Sequence record: ON529852.1
Strand: one strand, 5' to 3'
Length of the DNA stretch: 64,000 nt
Positions 16,922-24,053 of this stretch are shown here, piece after piece; position 1 is the stretch's first letter, and each line of letters starts with the position of its first letter. The notes below the pieces were generated by a model. That model was given only the letters and a program-made list of their open reading frames with translations. It was not told the DNA's origin and ran no database searches. A program made the position numbers and the translations under genes.

Positions 16922-17002
16922 TGGCGGGGACGGAGGGAATCGAACCCCCTGGATGACGCCTTCGGAGGGCGTTGCCTACATTCCGGTCGGCACTTCGCCC
17001 CC
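16922..17002 (-). tRNA. tRNA-Arg(CCG), atypical D arm
   Basis: GGGGGCG/CGTCCCC acceptor, ACGCC-CTCCGAA-GGCGT, GGTTCGATTCC, CCA. Confidence 0.8.
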
Positions 17003-17035: not shown

Positions 17036-17117
17036 TGGCGCCCAAGGCAGGATTTGAACCTGCGTTTGCAACTCCGCTACGGATAAGGCCTTCGTAGGAC
17101 CCCTCGGTTACTTGGGC
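17036..17117 (-). tRNA. tRNA-Arg(ACG)-like, no D stem, branched variable region
   Basis: GCCCAAG/CTTGGGC acceptor, GGGTC-CTACGAA-GGCCT, T arm GCAGG-TTCAAAT-CCTGC, CCA. Confidence 0.6.
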
Positions 17118-17120
17118 ATT

Positions 17121-17204
17121 TGGCTCCTATGAGAGGACTCGAACCTCTAAGTCTTGCGACGGTCGATTAACAGTCGACTGCGTTTACCATTCCGCCACAT
17201 AGGA
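17121..17204 (-). tRNA. tRNA-Asn(GTT) with long variable arm
   Basis: GTCGA-CTGTTAA-TCGAC; variable hairpin GTC-GCAA-GAC; CCA. Confidence 0.9.
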
Positions 17205-17436: not shown

Positions 17437-17513
17437 TGGTCCTAGCACCAGGATTTGAACCTGGGACCGAGCGGTTATCGACCGCGCGCTCTACCAAACT
17501 GAGCTATGCTAGG
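17437..17513 (-). tRNA. tRNA-Ile(GAT)
   Basis: GCGG-TCGATAA-CCGC (C33); CCA. Confidence 0.9.
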
Positions 17514-19590: not shown

Positions 19591-19884
19591 TCAGATTTCG
19601 CCGAGCGCGCTCAGGTACAGGTCCAGGATGGCGTCTTCTTCCTGGCGCTTGGCCTTGTCCTGCTTGCGCAGGCGCAGCACCTTACGCAGAATCTTCACGT
19701 CGTAGCCTTCGCCCTTGGCTTCGGCGAAGACTTCCTTCATGTCGACCATGACGGCCTGCTTGTCCTCTTCGAGGCGCTCCAGCCGCTCGATGATCGAGCG
19801 CAGGCGGCCCTGGGCGGAGGCGGTCAGGGCGTCGTCGGCCGACATGGCGTTGGCGGGCTCGACGCCGGGGGTGTTCTCGGACAT
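19591..19884 (-). CDS. gapR: GapR/DUF2312 nucleoid-associated protein
   Basis: LRSIIERLERLEEDK...MKEVFAEAKGEGYDVKILRKVLRLRKQD...EEDAILDLYLSALG. Confidence 0.95.
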   Translation of the reverse strand: MSENTPGVEPANAMSADDALTASAQGRLRSIIERLERLEEDKQAVMVDMKEVFAEAKGEGYDVKILRKVLRLRKQDKAKRQEEDAILDLYLSALGEI

Positions 19885-20590: not shown

Positions 20591-21478
20591 TTACAAAGTC
20601 ACGATCAGGCGGGGATTGAAGTTCGGGTTCAGTTCATGCCCGACATAGCCGCGAGGATTGCAGATCACGCGGGTTTCTCCGATCTGGTAGTCGCTGCTGT
20701 CATGCATGTGACCATGCACCCACAAGGCGGGCTCCCACTCCAACATCAGCGGCTCCAGCCGCGACGCATAGGCGGGGTTCAGCAGCGAACCCCGATAACG
20801 GGGATGGCTCGACTGCTCCGACGGCGCATGGTGGGAGATCACCACGGTCGGGCCGTCATGCGGGACCCGCAGCGTTTCCGTCAGGAAGAAGCGGCTTTCC
20901 AGATGGAGGCGTCGCGTATCTTCCGCCGTCAGGCGCTGCTGCTGCTTCAGTTCGATCTGCTGATAGTCGTTCATGTCCGACTGGGCATGCCGGATCGACA
21001 AGGGCCAGGTCCCATAGAGATCGAAGTCGGTCCACAAGGTGGAACCGAGGAAACGCACGTCGCCCACATGGACCTGCTCGTTATCCATGACGAAGACGCA
21101 GGCGGGCGCCAGTTCGTCAGCCTTGGCCTTCATCTTCTCGATGTGGCGGTGGTAGCGCCGCTTGCCGTAGAACTCGTGGTTGCCCGGCACATAGAGGCAG
21201 GGGACGTCGGGGAAATGACGCGCCAGCCAGATCACACCGACGACGCCCGTCGCCAGGTCGCCGGCGGCGATGACCACGTCGATCTCATCAGCCGTGGGCG
21301 CCGTCCAGGTGCGCCGGTCCATGCCGCCGAACTCCAGATGGAGGTCCGACAGGATCAGGGCGCGCAACGGCCGTCGTCCGGGCGTTCGCCGCGCCAGGCC
21401 GGCTTCGATGTCAGCCTGCATGTCGGCCGCAGCCGCCACAGTGAACTCCATCTCGGCCTTGCTCCACTCTGTCTCCAT
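20591..21478 (-). CDS. Calcineurin-like metallophosphoesterase
   Basis: SDLHLE, AGD, GNHE, HH, HGHMH motifs; start moved to ATG 21478 so it does not overlap the RNA gene. Confidence 0.92.
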   Translation of the reverse strand: METEWSKAEMEFTVAAAADMQADIEAGLARRTPGRRPLRALILSDLHLEFGGMDRRTWTAPTADEIDVVIAAGDLATGVVGVIWLARHFPDVPCLYVPGNHEFYGKRRYHRHIEKMKAKADELAPACVFVMDNEQVHVGDVRFLGSTLWTDFDLYGTWPLSIRHAQSDMNDYQQIELKQQQRLTAEDTRRLHLESRFFLTETLRVPHDGPTVVISHHAPSEQSSHPRYRGSLLNPAYASRLEPLMLEWEPALWVHGHMHDSSDYQIGETRVICNPRGYVGHELNPNFNPRLIVTL

Positions 21479-21499: not shown

Positions 21500-21618
21500 T
21501 GGAGCGGGTGGACAGACTCGAACTGCCGCCTCCGGGTTAGCCACCCGGCGCTCCTGGGTCCACGCGAACCCCCGACGATGATTCGCGTGATCATCGTCGG
21601 CCCTAGAGCCTCACCCGC
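21500..21618 (-). ncRNA. tRNA-like RNA (GCT at anticodon position) with two extra hairpins in the D loop
   Basis: GCGGGTG/CACCCGC acceptor + CCA, D stem GCTC/GAGC, CCGGG-TGGCTAA-CCCGG, T arm GGCAG-TTCGAGT-CTGTC; 119 nt. Confidence 0.75.
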
Positions 21619-21856
21619 ATAAGTTGGCAGGAGTTTTCAGATATGGCGAACCATACCCAGGGCGACCCTCCTGCCAGGAACCCCCGTCTCGGTTTCTTTC
21701 ACTGGCCCCGACACGAGCACCTGTCAAAGCCTATCTAGCCGCCAGGCTTGCGGAACGTCACGGGCGATTAGGCGCCTCGGGATGAACAGCGTTGCGGACG
21801 GCGTAGCATCGGCTTGCCGTGATTACTGGCAGACGGCGCCACTGGTGTCAACAATG

Positions 21857-21889: not shown

Positions 21890-22201
21890 TCACAGGTTCG
21901 TCATCCACTGCTTGCGGCAGCGGGTGTGATCCTTCCAGGACTTGCCGCCAGGACGCGACGCCATGAGGTCGTCGTAGGACGAGGGAAGGATCATGCGGCG
22001 CCCACGAGCGCGGTAGAGGCGGTCGTGGGCCTCGCCGGTGTTGCGCCGCCGCTCCTGCATGGTGCGGGGACAGCGGTGCATGTGACGCCAGCGGTGGCGG
22101 AAGCGCCGGCAGCGGTAGGGTTCGCCGGGCTCCAGGTAGAGGACGCGCCAGCCCACGAAGTAGAAGCCGGAGTGGGTGACGCGTTCGAATTGGGGCTTCA
22201 T
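21890..22201 (-). CDS. Basic hypothetical protein (103 aa)
   Basis: GGAGG upstream; LPSSYDD...KSWK...KQW pattern recalled from other phage ORFs. Confidence 0.65.
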   Translation of the reverse strand: MKPQFERVTHSGFYFVGWRVLYLEPGEPYRCRRFRHRWRHMHRCPRTMQERRRNTGEAHDRLYRARGRRMILPSSYDDLMASRPGGKSWKDHTRCRKQWMTNL

Positions 22202-22301: not shown

Positions 22302-22390
22302 TGGCGGATGGGGCAGGGATCGAACCCGCGTAACCCTTTCGGGTGTCGACCGCTTAGCAAGCGGCTGCCTTACCTCTCGGCCACCCATCC
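22302..22390 (-). tRNA. tRNA-Ser(GCT)
   Basis: CCGC-TTGCTAA-GCGG; long variable arm; CCA. Confidence 0.95.
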
Positions 22391-22397
22391 GGGGTGT

Positions 22398-22482
22398 TGG
22401 CGGTGCGCCAGGGAATCGAACCCTCAACCTTGCGGTCGGCGACGGTTTTCAAGGCCGCTTGTCCCCATGGACGCTGCGCACC
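22398..22482 (-). tRNA. tRNA-Ser(TGA)
   Basis: Loop CTTGAAA; class II; CCA. Confidence 0.9.
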
Positions 22483-23691: not shown

Positions 23692-23782
23692 TGGTGAACG
23701 TGGTCGGACTCGCACCGACGATGAAGGTTGTAACCTAACGGGATTAAGAGCCCCGGCCTCTCGCTACTGAGGTGACACGTCC
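23692..23782 (-). tRNA. tRNA-Lys(CTT) with long variable arm
   Basis: CGGGG-CTCTTAA-TCCCG; variable AGGT-TACA-ACCT; T loop TGCGAGT. Confidence 0.85.
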
Positions 23783-23818: not shown

Positions 23819-23889
23819 TGGAGCCGGCGGACGGTGTCGAACCGTCCCATGTCCACTACGAAAGGTCAGCCCTGCCACCAGGCGCCGGC
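23819..23889 (-). tRNA. tRNA-Thr(CGT), weak anticodon stem
   Basis: G1-C72/C2-G71 Thr identity; loop TT-CGT-AG with only 3 WC pairs in the stem; ACG occurs three times in leader 2. Confidence 0.65.
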
Positions 23890-23978: not shown

Positions 23979-24053
23979 TGGTCGGAACACCAGGATTCGA
24001 ACCTGGGACCCCTAGCTTCCCGAGCCAGTGCGCTACCGCTGCGCTACATTCCG
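23979..24053 (-). tRNA. tRNA-Pro(GGG)
   Basis: CTGGC-TCGGGAA-GCTAG (C33); CCA. Confidence 0.9.

What the first reader, a model, noticed from the sequence alone, without database searches (positions are those of the whole stretch)
21500..21618. tRNA-shaped RNA with two hairpins in its D loop whose loops are complementary (internal kissing loop)
SEEN: complete acceptor stem with CCA, D stem, anticodon arm (UG-GCU-AA, so G33 instead of U33) and T arm. It has a short variable loop, whereas tRNA-Ser needs a long arm for SerRS. The D loop holds an 11-bp perfect hairpin CCGACGATGAT-CACGCGA-ATCATCGTCGG and a 6-bp hairpin GGGTTC-GCGT-GGACCC. CACGCGAA in hairpin 1 is the exact reverse complement of TTCGCGTG in hairpin 2. 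A canonical Ser(GCT) exists at 22302, so this RNA is not needed for decoding. INFERENCE: a tRNA mimic or decoy (for an anticodon nuclease, T-box, RelA or synthetase), a D-loop intron, or a rigid appended domain that binds a protein such as the adjacent metallophosphoesterase.
Basis: partly seen in the sequence, partly recalled or inferred. Interest (0 to 1): 0.8.

Follow-up and report, generated by a model that had tools for sequence, protein, structure and literature searches.

The report
Phage tRNA mimic with kissing hairpins
Large Caulobacter and Brevundimonas phages carry an unannotated tRNA-shaped RNA gene whose D loop holds two hairpins with tips that have stayed complementary through evolution, which makes it a real and apparently undescribed tRNA-derived RNA of unknown function.

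Summary
Window 21500-21618 (minus strand; Brevundimonas phage Kabachok) folds as a full tRNA cloverleaf with an encoded CCA. A 45-nt, two-hairpin insert sits in the D loop just after the conserved GG.

ARAGORN, Rfam and every GenBank record miss it. With the two hairpins deleted in silico, ARAGORN calls it a tRNA.

I found 11 distinct versions: 9 phage isolates giving 4 sequence types, plus 7 metagenomic types. Ten lie just upstream of a metallophosphoesterase operon inside a tRNA island; the eleventh, L094, lies two genes further up.

- All four cloverleaf stems covary, and so does the 8-14 tertiary pair.
- Every insert folds as a long hairpin followed by a short one.
- The hairpin tips differ between lineages but stay complementary within each: 5-8 nt, mean 6.5, against 3.9 for mismatched partners (0 of 20000 permutations).
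- The anticodon is not conserved (GCU, GUU, GAU, AAU). Residue 33 is rarely U. The discriminator does not fit the anticodon.
- Canonical tRNAs with the same anticodon occur in the three genomes where I looked (Kabachok, CcrColossus, contig L074).

Best reading: a non-decoding tRNA mimic. By geometric inference its tips pair between molecules rather than within one. Function is untested. No link to the neighbouring phosphoesterase is supported.

The parts
21500..21618 (-). Whole tRNA-like RNA gene, 119 nt. RNA position p corresponds to window 21619 - p.
   Evidence: Fold. CM R1 scores it 119.7 bits, against 59 bits or less for ordinary tRNAs. ARAGORN calls it tRNA-Ser(GCU) only after the hairpins are deleted in silico. 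It is unannotated in all records.
21612..21618 (-). Acceptor stem, 5' strand (GCGGGUG).
   Evidence: Pairs with 21504-21510. Across 11 homologues 96% of cells are paired and 13 cells changed on both sides.
21606..21611 (-). Residues 8-9 (AG) and D stem 5' strand (GCUC).
   Evidence: A8 goes with U14 in 9 members and U8 with A14 in 2, so the tertiary 8-14 pair covaries. The D stem is 100% paired.
21601..21605 (-). D-loop residues U14 A15 G G G, holding the G18/G19 equivalents.
   Evidence: UAGGG or AAGGG is conserved in 10 of 11 members, directly before the insert.
21572..21600 (-). Hairpin h1: 11-bp stem with loop CACGCGA.
   Evidence: A long first hairpin (8-14 bp) is present in all 11 members, with unrelated sequences.
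21556..21571 (-). Hairpin h2: stem GGGUUC/GGACCC with loop GCGU. It follows h1 with a 0-nt linker.
   Evidence: A short second hairpin (5-8 bp) is present in all 11 members.
21582..21589 (-). h1 tip CACGCGAA, complementary to the h2 tip.
   Evidence: Exact 8-nt complement. Duplex energy -11.3 kcal/mol.
21561..21568 (-). h2 tip UUCGCGUG, complementary to the h1 tip.
   Evidence: RNAalifold on the MAFFT alignment returns this tip-tip helix as the consensus, with compensatory changes.
21550..21555 (-). Last D-loop residues (AG) and D stem 3' strand (GAGC).
21532..21548 (-). Anticodon arm CCGGG-UGGCUAA-CCCGG. The anticodon GCU is at 21539-21541 and G33 at 21542.
   Evidence: The stem covaries: 96% paired, 12 cells changed on both sides. 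Loop consensus in ten members is Y32 N33 R34 N35 U36 A37 A38.
21511..21531 (-). 4-nt variable loop (AGGC) and T arm GGCAG-UUCGAGU-CUGUC.
   Evidence: The T stem covaries. The T loop is UUCGAGU in 9 of 11 members, UUCAAGU in Kikimora and UUCGAUU in L094.
21500..21510 (-). Acceptor stem 3' strand (CACCCGC), discriminator U73 and encoded CCA.
   Evidence: An NCCA end is present in 9 of 11 members. All 20 canonical tRNAs of the window also encode CCA.
21623..21692 (-). Conserved leader motif just upstream. It probably lies on the same transcript but is separable from the tRNA-like RNA.
   Evidence: Found in 13 loci. Its outer stem covaries. It is retained in L072, L075 and L076, which lack the tRNA-like RNA. 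No Rfam match.
21821..21851 (-). Conserved promoter-like boxes: TTGACA, 17 nt, then CAGTAATC.
   Evidence: Conserved in Kabachok, Gurke, Colossus, L072, L073, L075, L079 and L090. The sigma-70 consensus scan did not call it, so promoter function is an inference.
20591..21478 (-). Downstream metallophosphoesterase gene, first gene of the operon. It is context only, not shown to be part of the element.
   Evidence: Pfam Metallophos domain at residues 39-260. Synteny.

Best explanation
Window 21500-21618 (minus strand) encodes a 119-nt tRNA-derived RNA that does not act as an ordinary decoder.

Shown:
- It has a complete, covarying cloverleaf with tRNA-type tertiary signatures: an 8-14 pair that covaries, GG before the insert, a canonical T loop and an encoded CCA.
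- Between the D-loop GG and the last D-loop residues it carries a long hairpin (h1) followed within 0-6 nt by a short one (h2).
- Every lineage has different tip sequences, and within each lineage the h1 and h2 tips stay Watson-Crick complementary.

Inferred:
- It is transcribed with the leader of the phosphoesterase-DUF4170-GapR-deformylase operon, from conserved upstream boxes.
- It is released by the host tRNA-end enzymes: RNase P at position 1 and 3' trimming to CCA.
- A 6-8-bp helix that uses nearly all of two small loops stacks end-to-end with both stems. That would put the two hairpin bases about 55-60 A apart, while they are joined by 0-3 nt in ten of eleven members (6 in L094). The result would be dimers or rings of tRNA-shaped units.
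- The RNA then serves as a tRNA mimic: a multivalent decoy or scaffold for a tRNA-binding protein, such as a host tRNA-targeting defence nuclease or a processing or modification enzyme.
- The invariant U36-A37-A38 half of the anticodon loop is the likeliest recognition site.
For: Structure:
- MFE is the cloverleaf plus two hairpins, z = -3.1.
- ARAGORN finds no gene in any of the 11 intact sequences. It calls a tRNA-type gene in all 11 once the hairpins are removed; L094 gets no assignable anticodon.
- RNAalifold recovers all four arms, and 20 of 29 pairs show double changes.
- The four cloverleaf stems are 96-100% paired and the tip-tip helix 82%, against 7-76% when partners are slid. At most 2 of 2000 column shuffles reach the observed value.
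- A8/U14 swaps to U8/A14 in two members.

RNA level and strand:
- 30 of 190 hairpin pairs are G-U on this strand.
- The sense strand folds better than the antisense in all 11 full elements.

Loop-loop pairing:
- Cognate tips share 5-8 nt of perfect complement, mean 6.5. Non-cognate tips average 3.9. None of 20000 permutations reaches the observed mean.
- Kabachok, L077 and L094 have tips that are complementary but not identical. Pairing is therefore what is kept, not a repeated site.

Architecture is constant: h1 8-14 bp, linker 0-6 nt, h2 5-8 bp.

Not a normal decoder:
- Anticodons are GCU, GUU, GAU and AAU, and one member has a 6-nt loop.
- N33 is G, C, A or U.
- The discriminator is U in 10 of 11. 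The same phage's tRNA-Ser(GCU) and tRNA-Asn have G73 and its tRNA-Ile has A73.
- There is no long variable arm for a Ser identity.
- Acceptor pairs 1-3 are not conserved.
- Canonical tRNAs with the same anticodon sit nearby: Ser(GCU) in Kabachok, Asn in Colossus and Asn(GUU) in L074.

Family status:
- One copy per genome. CM scores are 73-120 bits, against 59 or less for tRNAs.

Precedent:
- Phage RNAs near tRNA islands assemble through intermolecular kissing loops. One such loop had earlier been read from covariation as a tertiary contact (bioRxiv 10.1101/2024.12.08.627333).
Against: - There are no expression, processing, aminoacylation or oligomerisation data of any kind.
- The intermolecular reading rests only on a back-of-envelope geometric argument.
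- The conserved U36-A37-A38, Y32 and 7-nt loop are also what a real ANN-decoding tRNA would keep.
- This phage lineage tolerates odd features in apparently working tRNAs: C33 in tRNA-Ile and tRNA-Pro, extra arms in tRNA-Asn and tRNA-Lys, and a mini-hairpin at the same D-loop site in a tRNA-Arg-like gene (L074:5439-5526).
- Member L090 has GUU plus G73. From textbook E. coli identity rules, that matches an Asn identity.
- No target protein is identified.
- Relatives lacking the RNA keep the operon, so it is dispensable for operon expression.
Confidence: 0.5

Rival explanations
1. A working, aminoacylated tRNA with a decorated D loop. It decodes AGY, AAY or AUY depending on the phage. The two-hairpin module acts as a shield or handle, for example against a host nuclease that cuts the corresponding host tRNA, or as a binding site for a phage factor.
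For: - Complete cloverleaf, tertiary pairs, 7-nt anticodon loop with Y32 and U36-A37-A38, and an encoded CCA like all other phage tRNAs.
- It lies in a tRNA island.
- The lineage has other decorated or C33 tRNAs, and a tRNA-Arg-like gene with a small hairpin at the same D-loop site.
- L090 combines GUU with G73.
Against: - The anticodon switches between three amino-acid families, while the discriminator stays U and acceptor pairs 1-3 drift.
- The GCU version lacks the long variable arm that SerRS needs (textbook identity rule).
- The GUU versions lack the U1-A72 seen in the phage's own tRNA-Asn.
- Canonical isoacceptors are present in the same genomes.
- N33 is not U in 8 of 10 members.
- A 45-nt domain at the elbow is likely to clash on the ribosome (inference).
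Confidence: 0.2
2. The same non-decoding RNA, but the tips pair within one molecule. An internal kissing loop or pseudoknot would then make a rigid appended domain at the tRNA elbow.
For: - The complementarity is conserved, and covariation cannot tell cis from trans.
- h1 is always 2-6 bp longer than h2 in the MFE folds. A side-by-side packing (h2 plus kiss roughly equal to h1) might require that, whereas a symmetric dimer does not.
Against: - The linker between the hairpins is 0-3 nt in 10 of 11 members. The loops are 6-8 nt and almost fully consumed by the duplex.
- A coaxial loop-loop helix would separate the hairpin bases by about 55-60 A (my estimate, not modelled).
- Both stems covary, so neither is likely to be melted.
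- 6 of 11 tip pairs are palindromes. That is unnecessary for cis pairing but allows homotypic trans pairing.
Confidence: 0.3
3. A cis-acting processing or stability signal. The tRNA shape only recruits RNase P and 3' processing enzymes. That would separate the leader from the operon mRNA or give the mRNA a defined, protected 5' end.
For: - It sits between a conserved leader and the first ORF, 21 nt before the annotated start in Kabachok.
- No terminator lies between it and the operon.
- tRNA-mRNA cotranscripts are known in bacteria and phages (general knowledge).
Against: - It does not explain selection on the anticodon arm, on U36-A37-A38, on the 8-14 pair or on the two hairpins and their tips.
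- Relatives express the same operon without it (L072, L075, L076).
- In L094 two ORFs lie between it and the phosphoesterase gene.
Confidence: 0.12
4. A tRNA gene disrupted by an intron or a selfish palindromic insertion, so a pseudogene. Or the palindromes act at the DNA level, as a protein site or cruciform.
For: - Deleting the insert restores a sequence that ARAGORN calls a tRNA.
- Many tips are restriction-site-like GC palindromes.
Against: - The inserts are unalignable in sequence, yet all keep the same two-hairpin layout and complementary tips. The cloverleaf also keeps compensating.
- G-U pairs and the sense/antisense energy asymmetry point to RNA-level selection.
- There is no bulge-helix-bulge, and 45 nt is too small to self-splice.
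- The three non-palindromic pairs are complementary rather than identical.
Confidence: 0.04

Closest known systems
Canonical bacterial or phage tRNA (Rfam RF00005)
   Same: Seven-bp acceptor stem, D, anticodon and T arms, the 8-14 pair, GG in the D loop, a UUCGAGU T loop and an encoded CCA. It is located in a phage tRNA island.
   Different: - A 45-52-nt two-hairpin insert sits in the D loop, which is normally 7-11 nt.
- It is invisible to ARAGORN and below the Rfam threshold.
- The anticodon is not conserved across orthologues.
- The discriminator and acceptor pairs do not match the anticodon's identity set.
YrlA, the tRNA-mimicking Y RNAs of bacteria and phages (Chen et al. 2014, PMC4201824)
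   Same: A non-coding RNA with tRNA-like D and T arms, recognised by tRNA enzymes. It is reported in phages, including CcrColossus according to PMC12135203.
   Different: - YrlA is circularly permuted. Its ends form a Ro60-binding stem where the anticodon arm would be, and its acceptor stem is closed by a loop.
- YrlA is encoded next to rsr (Ro60).
- The RNA here has open acceptor ends with CCA and an intact anticodon hairpin.
- No Ro60 gene is annotated in the 49 kb around it in Colossus or in 49 kb of the Kabachok window.
   Same: A phage RNA carrying two loops that are complementary to each other. The loops covary among related phages yet pair between molecules to build a ring.
   Different: - pRNA has no tRNA fold and uses 4-nt loop pairing.
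- It docks on the portal for DNA packaging.
- Nothing links the present RNA to packaging.
ROOL and GOLLD RNAs (bioRxiv 10.1101/2024.12.08.627333)
   Same: Phage or prophage non-coding RNAs found near tRNA islands. They self-assemble through intermolecular kissing loops that covary.
   Different: - They are large RNAs (many GOLLD exceed 800 nt), have no tRNA fold and form cages of many subunits.
- There is no sequence or structural homology, and no Rfam hit for them in the window.
tmRNA and viral 3' tRNA-like structures (TYMV type)
   Same: tRNA mimicry with an acceptor/T-arm module and a CCA end.
   Different: - tmRNA lacks an anticodon arm and carries an mRNA-like tag. ARAGORN, which searches for tmRNA genes too, reported none.
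- Plant viral tRNA-like structures have pseudoknotted acceptor stems at a genome end.
- Neither has a D-loop two-hairpin module.
Archaeal or eukaryal tRNA genes with non-canonical introns in the D loop
   Same: Extra sequence interrupts the D loop of an otherwise normal tRNA gene.
   Different: - Those introns are bounded by a bulge-helix-bulge and removed by a splicing endonuclease that bacteria lack.
- The insert here is two autonomous, covarying hairpins with selected tip complementarity.

Membership tests
Canonical decoding tRNA | Cloverleaf with a 7-bp acceptor stem, a 5-bp anticodon stem, a 7-nt loop, a T arm and a CCA end. | tested here: met
   9 of 11 members are complete. L073 and L094 have a mismatched 1-72 pair and no CCA.
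Canonical decoding tRNA | Recognised by tRNA gene finders or the Rfam tRNA model. | tested here: not met
   ARAGORN finds no gene in any of 11 intact sequences. Rfam gives nothing at gathering score and only partial hits of 22-24 bits to 3' halves. The feature is met only after in-silico removal of the hairpins.
Canonical decoding tRNA | D loop of ordinary size (about 7-11 nt). | tested here: not met
   The D loop is 52-59 nt in all members.
Canonical decoding tRNA | Anticodon and identity elements conserved among orthologues and consistent with one amino acid. | tested here: not met
   Anticodons are GCU, GUU, GAU and AAU, and one member has a 6-nt loop. U73 occurs in 10 of 11. Acceptor pairs 1-3 vary. 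There is no long variable arm for Ser. The phage's own Ser(GCU) and Asn tRNAs have G73 and its Ile tRNA has A73.
Canonical decoding tRNA | U33. | tested here: not met
   G33 in Kabachok, and U33 in only 2 of 10 members. This is weak evidence, because two ordinary tRNAs of the window have C33.
Canonical decoding tRNA | Aminoacylated and used on the ribosome. | not testable with these tools
   Needs acid gels or polysome profiling.
YrlA / Y RNA | Encoded next to a Ro60 (TROVE) gene. | tested here: not met
   No such gene is annotated among the neighbours in any locus. None is annotated in 49 kb around the element in Kabachok or Colossus. Most genes there are 'hypothetical' and were not screened for TROVE domains.
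YrlA / Y RNA | Permuted tRNA-like domain, with the 5' and 3' ends forming a Ro-binding stem. | tested here: not met
   The ends form a normal acceptor stem with CCA, and the anticodon arm is a closed hairpin. No other Rfam family reaches gathering score in the window.
tmRNA | tRNA-like domain plus a tag reading frame. | tested here: not met
   ARAGORN, which also searches for tmRNA genes, reported none. The RNA is 119 nt with an intact anticodon arm.
tRNA intron (bulge-helix-bulge type) | Bulge-helix-bulge at the insert boundaries, plus a splicing endonuclease in the host. | tested here: not met
   Judged by inspection of the folds. The insert is two closed hairpins flanked by single-stranded D-loop residues. 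That bacteria lack the endonuclease is general knowledge.
   There are 9 different tip sequences, 5-8 nt of complement each, and 0 of 20000 permutations reach the observed mean.
   Only a geometric inference from linker and loop lengths.

The most novel reading that the evidence does not exclude
A natural tRNA-fold RNA that self-assembles. That would give the phage a multivalent tRNA decoy or scaffold, for example against tRNA-targeting host defences. As far as my searches show, this would be the first tRNA-derived RNA with a selected quaternary-structure module, and a small relative in principle of the ROOL and GOLLD assemblies.
Probability: 0.35. Interest if true: 0.85.

Novelty: new variant of a known kind. 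Interest (0 to 1): 0.72.

Why it matters
Phage tRNAs and tRNA mimics are now known to take part in the contest with host tRNA-cleaving defences. Phage non-coding RNAs near tRNA islands have recently been shown to build RNA-only assemblies.

This family combines the two themes in 119 nt: a fully tRNA-shaped body and a covarying pair of sticky hairpin tips at the elbow.

- It is small enough for direct biophysics: native gels, SAXS and cryo-EM of oligomers.
- It occurs in culturable phages of laboratory hosts (CcrColossus on Caulobacter crescentus, Kabachok on Brevundimonas pondensis), so deletion and compensatory-mutation tests are feasible.
- It shows that standard tRNA finders and Rfam miss tRNA-derived genes with large D-loop inserts. 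Several other odd tRNA-like genes in the same island are likewise unannotated.

If it proved to be a working tRNA, it would extend what a ribosome and a synthetase can accept. If it is a decoy, it points to an unknown tRNA-directed host factor in alphaproteobacteria.

Tried and rejected
**Searches that found no further members**
- Exact-pattern scans for the conserved 5' and 3' cores in IMG/VR returned only CcrColossus and CcrPW.
- A looser IMG/VR pattern gave 55 loci. My descriptor showed all but Colossus and PW to be chance matches.
- Two JGI metagenome scans gave 0 and 4 hits, and one GTDB genome scan gave 6. All were chance matches.
- New members came only through neighbours of the phosphoesterase protein.

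**Family and annotation checks**
- Rfam at gathering and at permissive E-values gave no family for the element or the leader.
- ARAGORN found nothing on the intact sequences.
- A search for a close paralogue among the window's tRNAs found none. All are 63-70% identical to the hairpin-deleted element.

**Neighbouring genes**
- The phosphoesterase has only generic Metallophos domains and no PDB relative by sequence. It is widespread without the RNA, so I dropped a specific partnership.
- A Ro60/YrlA connection, a lead from PMC12135203, was rejected on topology and lack of adjacency.

**Other readings considered**
- The leader's TGGCAG-N5-TTGCC looks like a sigma-54 promoter in several members. 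Colossus and L071 replace it with other sequences that keep the pairing, so I read it as an RNA stem.
- Literature searches for a D-loop-insert tRNA-like phage RNA found nothing.

**A step I skipped**
- I did not run the count of structure pairs, to avoid typing a long dot-bracket string. The same controls were computed in Python.
Full report
**Where the window comes from**

The window is 100% identical to Brevundimonas phage vB_BpoS-Kabachok (ON529852, a 356-kb member of Dolichocephalovirinae). Window position equals record position minus 248000.

The finding lies on the minus strand, in a 411-bp stretch without annotation. That stretch sits between a hypothetical gene (21890-22201) and a metallophosphoesterase gene (20591-21478). 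It is inside an island of at least 20 minus-strand tRNA genes.

**The observation**

- a 7-bp acceptor stem, then U73 and CCA;
- D stem GCUC/GAGC;
- anticodon arm with loop UGGCUAA (G33, anticodon GCU);
- a 4-nt variable loop;
- a T arm with loop UUCGAGU;
- inside the D loop, an 11-bp hairpin (loop CACGCGA) followed directly by a 6-bp hairpin (loop GCGU);
- CACGCGAA and UUCGCGUG as exact reverse complements.

The MFE structure is this cloverleaf plus the two hairpins: -62.3 kcal/mol, z = -3.1 against dinucleotide shuffles.

ARAGORN and Rfam, both at gathering score and at E up to 10, do not see it. None of the GenBank records annotates it.

**Homologues**

*Phage isolates.*
- The element is identical in four sister phages: Domovoi, Papperlapapp, Marchewka and Bambus.
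- It is clearly diverged in Kikimora and Gurke.
- blastn also found its 3' half in Caulobacter phages CcrColossus and CcrPW. Reading those loci showed the full element, again just upstream of the phosphoesterase gene.

*Database scans.* Pattern scans of IMG/VR, JGI metagenomes and GTDB genomes gave nothing new.

*Search through the neighbouring protein.* I searched with the neighbouring phosphoesterase protein and fetched contigs of its closer relatives. A simple cloverleaf descriptor that allows a long D loop, plus inspection, found seven more types: L071, L073, L074, L077, L079, L090 (also in L091-L093) and L094.

*Separation from ordinary tRNAs.* A covariance model built from the 11 types scores members at 73-120 bits and ordinary tRNAs at 59 bits or less. 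It finds one copy per genome.

*Relatives without the element.*
- L072, L075 and L076 keep the leader and the operon but lack the element.
- L078, L096 and L097 lack both the leader and the element.

**It is a tRNA fold under selection**

- With the two hairpins deleted in silico, ARAGORN calls a tRNA-type gene in all 11: Ser GCU, Asn GUU, Ile GAU or AAU, and undetermined for L094. With the hairpins present it calls none.
- RNAalifold on a plain MAFFT alignment recovers the acceptor, D, anticodon and T stems. 20 of 29 predicted pairs show changes on both sides.
- In my controls the four stems are 96-100% paired, against 24-76% when the 3' partner is slid by 1-3 columns. At most 2 of 2000 column shuffles reach the observed value.
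- The tertiary 8-14 pair covaries. Nine members have A8 with U14, and two (L077, L094) have U8 with A14.
- The GG that normally docks on the T loop is conserved directly before the insert, and the T loop is canonical.
- G-U pairs (30 of 190 hairpin pairs) and a consistent sense-over-antisense folding advantage show that selection acts on the RNA of this strand.

**The insert**

All 11 inserts (52-59 nt of D loop) fold on their own into a long hairpin h1 (8-14 bp, sometimes with a bulge), a linker of 0-6 nt and a short hairpin h2 (5-8 bp). The stem sequences cannot be aligned between lineages.

The tips differ as well:

| Member | h1 tip / h2 tip |
|---|---|
| Kabachok | CACGCGAA / UUCGCGUG |
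| Kikimora | UCGGCCGA in both |
| Colossus | AGCGCU in both |
| PW | GAAGCGCU / AGCGCUUC |
| L071 | GGACGU / ACGUCC |
| L073, L090 | UGCGCA in both |
| L074 | ACGCG / CGCGU |
| L077 | UCGCACG / CGUGCGA |
| L079 | CGCGCG in both |
| L094 | UGUGCG / CGCACA |

- Cognate tips share on average 6.5 nt of perfect complement. Non-cognate combinations share 3.9, and shuffled tips 3.6. None of 20000 permutations of partners reaches the observed mean.
- RNAalifold independently reports the tip-tip helix as the conserved pairing in that region. It is 82% paired, against 7-60% when slid.
- In Kabachok, L077 and L094 the tips are complementary but not identical. What is preserved is therefore base pairing, not two copies of one site.
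- Six of the eleven pairs are palindromes. That is far more than expected for random complementary hexamers (about 1 in 64), and I cannot explain it.

**Pairing within one molecule or between molecules?**

Covariation cannot tell. One ROOL quaternary kissing loop had earlier been read from covariation as a tertiary contact (bioRxiv 10.1101/2024.12.08.627333).

My inference runs as follows.
- The duplex uses 6-8 nt of loops that are 6-8 nt long. It should therefore stack roughly coaxially with both stems, as in other fully paired kissing complexes.
- With an h1 of about 11 bp, a 6-bp kiss and an h2 of about 5 bp, the two hairpin bases would lie about 55-60 A apart.
- They are joined by only 0-3 nt in ten of eleven members.
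- Both stems covary, so they are probably not melted.

Pairing in trans removes the problem. With h1 of one molecule on h2 of another and vice versa, two parallel composite helices of equal length form automatically.

I rate trans pairing somewhat more likely than cis. Two caveats apply. It is untested, and the conserved h1 > h2 asymmetry could instead reflect a side-by-side cis arrangement.

**Is it a decoder?**

*Evidence against.*
- Orthologues carry GCU (the two Brevundimonas-phage types), GUU (six types), GAU or AAU. L094 has a 6-nt loop.
- Residue 33 is G, C, A or U.
- The discriminator is U in ten and G in one.
- Acceptor pairs 1-3 are not conserved.
- The same phage's canonical tRNA-Ser(GCU) and tRNA-Asn have G73, and its tRNA-Ile has A73.
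- The GCU form has no long variable arm.
- Canonical isoacceptors are present nearby: for Kabachok, for Colossus and for L074.

*Evidence for.*
- Y32, R34, U36, A37 and A38 are invariant in ten members while the anticodon stem changes freely. That half of the loop is therefore functional. From general knowledge, it is the context of t6A37 in ANN-reading tRNAs.
- This lineage tolerates odd tRNAs. tRNA-Ile and tRNA-Pro have C33. tRNA-Asn and a tRNA-Lys-like gene carry extra arms. A tRNA-Arg-like gene in L074 has a GCC-UUCG-GGC mini-hairpin at the same D-loop site.

I therefore keep a 0.2 probability for a decorated but working tRNA.

**Context**

- The element follows a conserved leader (window 21623-21692) and conserved promoter-like boxes (21821-21851).
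- It precedes an operon encoding the phosphoesterase, DUF4170, a GapR-like protein and peptide deformylase.
- The phosphoesterase has only generic domains and no solved relative by sequence. It occurs in 190 phage records and in close relatives without the RNA. No specific partnership is supported.
- YrlA, a tRNA-mimicking Y RNA reported for CcrColossus (PMC12135203; PMC4201824), differs in topology and lies next to Ro60. No Ro60 gene is annotated near this element.
- Gill et al. 2012 reported that Rfam found only tRNAs in Colossus (PMC3556154). Literature searches found no description of this RNA.

**Verdict**

The structure is real and conserved, and it is not in Rfam 15 or the papers I searched. 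It is a tRNA-derived RNA with a covarying two-hairpin module at the elbow. Its function is unknown.

The best-supported class is a non-decoding tRNA mimic that probably self-associates. Confidence in that composite reading is 0.5. Confidence that the RNA and its selected tip pairing are real is about 0.9.

No step in this work needed to be referred.

Noticed in passing
window 21623-21692 (-); also L006:1888-1951(-), L072:2078-2145, L073:712-776, L074:2258-2323, L075:1174-1237, L077:1284-1351, L079:1276-1340, L090:981-1044, L071:2165-2224, Colossus L008 about 2355-2405: A conserved leader motif of about 65 nt. Its layout is CGGGGUU, an outer-stem 5' strand, GCCCGG, a variable hairpin, YUNAAAAC, then the outer-stem 3' strand. 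The outer stem covaries (CUGGCAGGAG/CUCCUGCCA; GGUGG/CCACC in Colossus; GAUGG/CCAUC in L071). CGGG could pair with CCCG as a pseudoknot. The motif is kept in relatives that lack the tRNA-like RNA. No Rfam match. It may be a new cis-regulatory element of the phosphoesterase-deformylase operon.
   Followed up: partly
window 17437-17513 (-) and 23979-24053 (-); L075:3296-3371: The canonical phage tRNA-Ile(GAU) and tRNA-Pro(GGG) have C33 instead of the near-universal U33 (loops UCGAUAA and UCGGGAA). The Ile variant recurs in a metagenomic relative.
   Followed up: partly
window 22397-22481 (-): An unannotated tRNA-Ser(UGA)-like gene with anticodon loop CUUGAAA, lying between two annotated tRNA-Ser genes. 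ARAGORN and Rfam miss it here. The homologous position is annotated as tRNA-Ser only in phage Domovoi.
   Followed up: partly
window 16922-17002 (-), 23692-23782 (-), 23819-23889 (-), about 17036-17117 (-): Further unannotated cloverleaf-like sequences ending in CCA. One is Arg(CCG)-like with an extended D arm; its Colossus homologue is annotated 'tRNA-OTHER'. One is Lys(CUU)-like with a long variable arm and T loop UGCGAGU. Two have an acceptor stem and T arm but an odd middle.
   Followed up: partly
L074:5439-5526 (+): A tRNA-Arg(CCU)-like gene of 88 nt with a GCC-UUCG-GGC mini-hairpin inserted in the D loop right after GG. This is the same site as the two-hairpin insert. It is the best-scoring ordinary tRNA against model R1 (59 bits). 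It suggests that D-loop position ~20 is a recurrent insertion site in this lineage, and a possible evolutionary route to the element.
   Followed up: partly
window 17121-17204 (-): The canonical phage tRNA-Asn(GUU) is 84 nt, with an extended variable region and a U1-A72 first pair. Colossus and L074 have 88-89-nt versions. From general knowledge, U1-A72 is the mark used by the GatCAB transamidation route.
   Followed up: no
window 21368-21478 (-): The annotated phosphoesterase ORF of the Kabachok-type phages is 37 codons longer at its N terminus than in Kikimora, Gurke, Colossus and PW. The Pfam domain starts at residue 39. The annotated start, 21 nt after the CCA, may be too far upstream.
   Followed up: no
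window 19591-19884 (-): A GapR-like DNA-binding protein (PF10073, E = 5e-32) is encoded in the same operon. It is annotated only as hypothetical. A copy also occurs in L079.
   Followed up: no
tips of h1 and h2 in 6 of 11 family members (Kikimora, Colossus, PW, L073, L079, L090): The complementary tips are identical GC-rich palindromes (CGGCCG, AGCGCU, UGCGCA, CGCGCG). That is far more often than expected for random complementary hexamers. It remains unexplained. It could mean homotypic pairing between molecules, or a copy mechanism between the two loops.
   Followed up: partly
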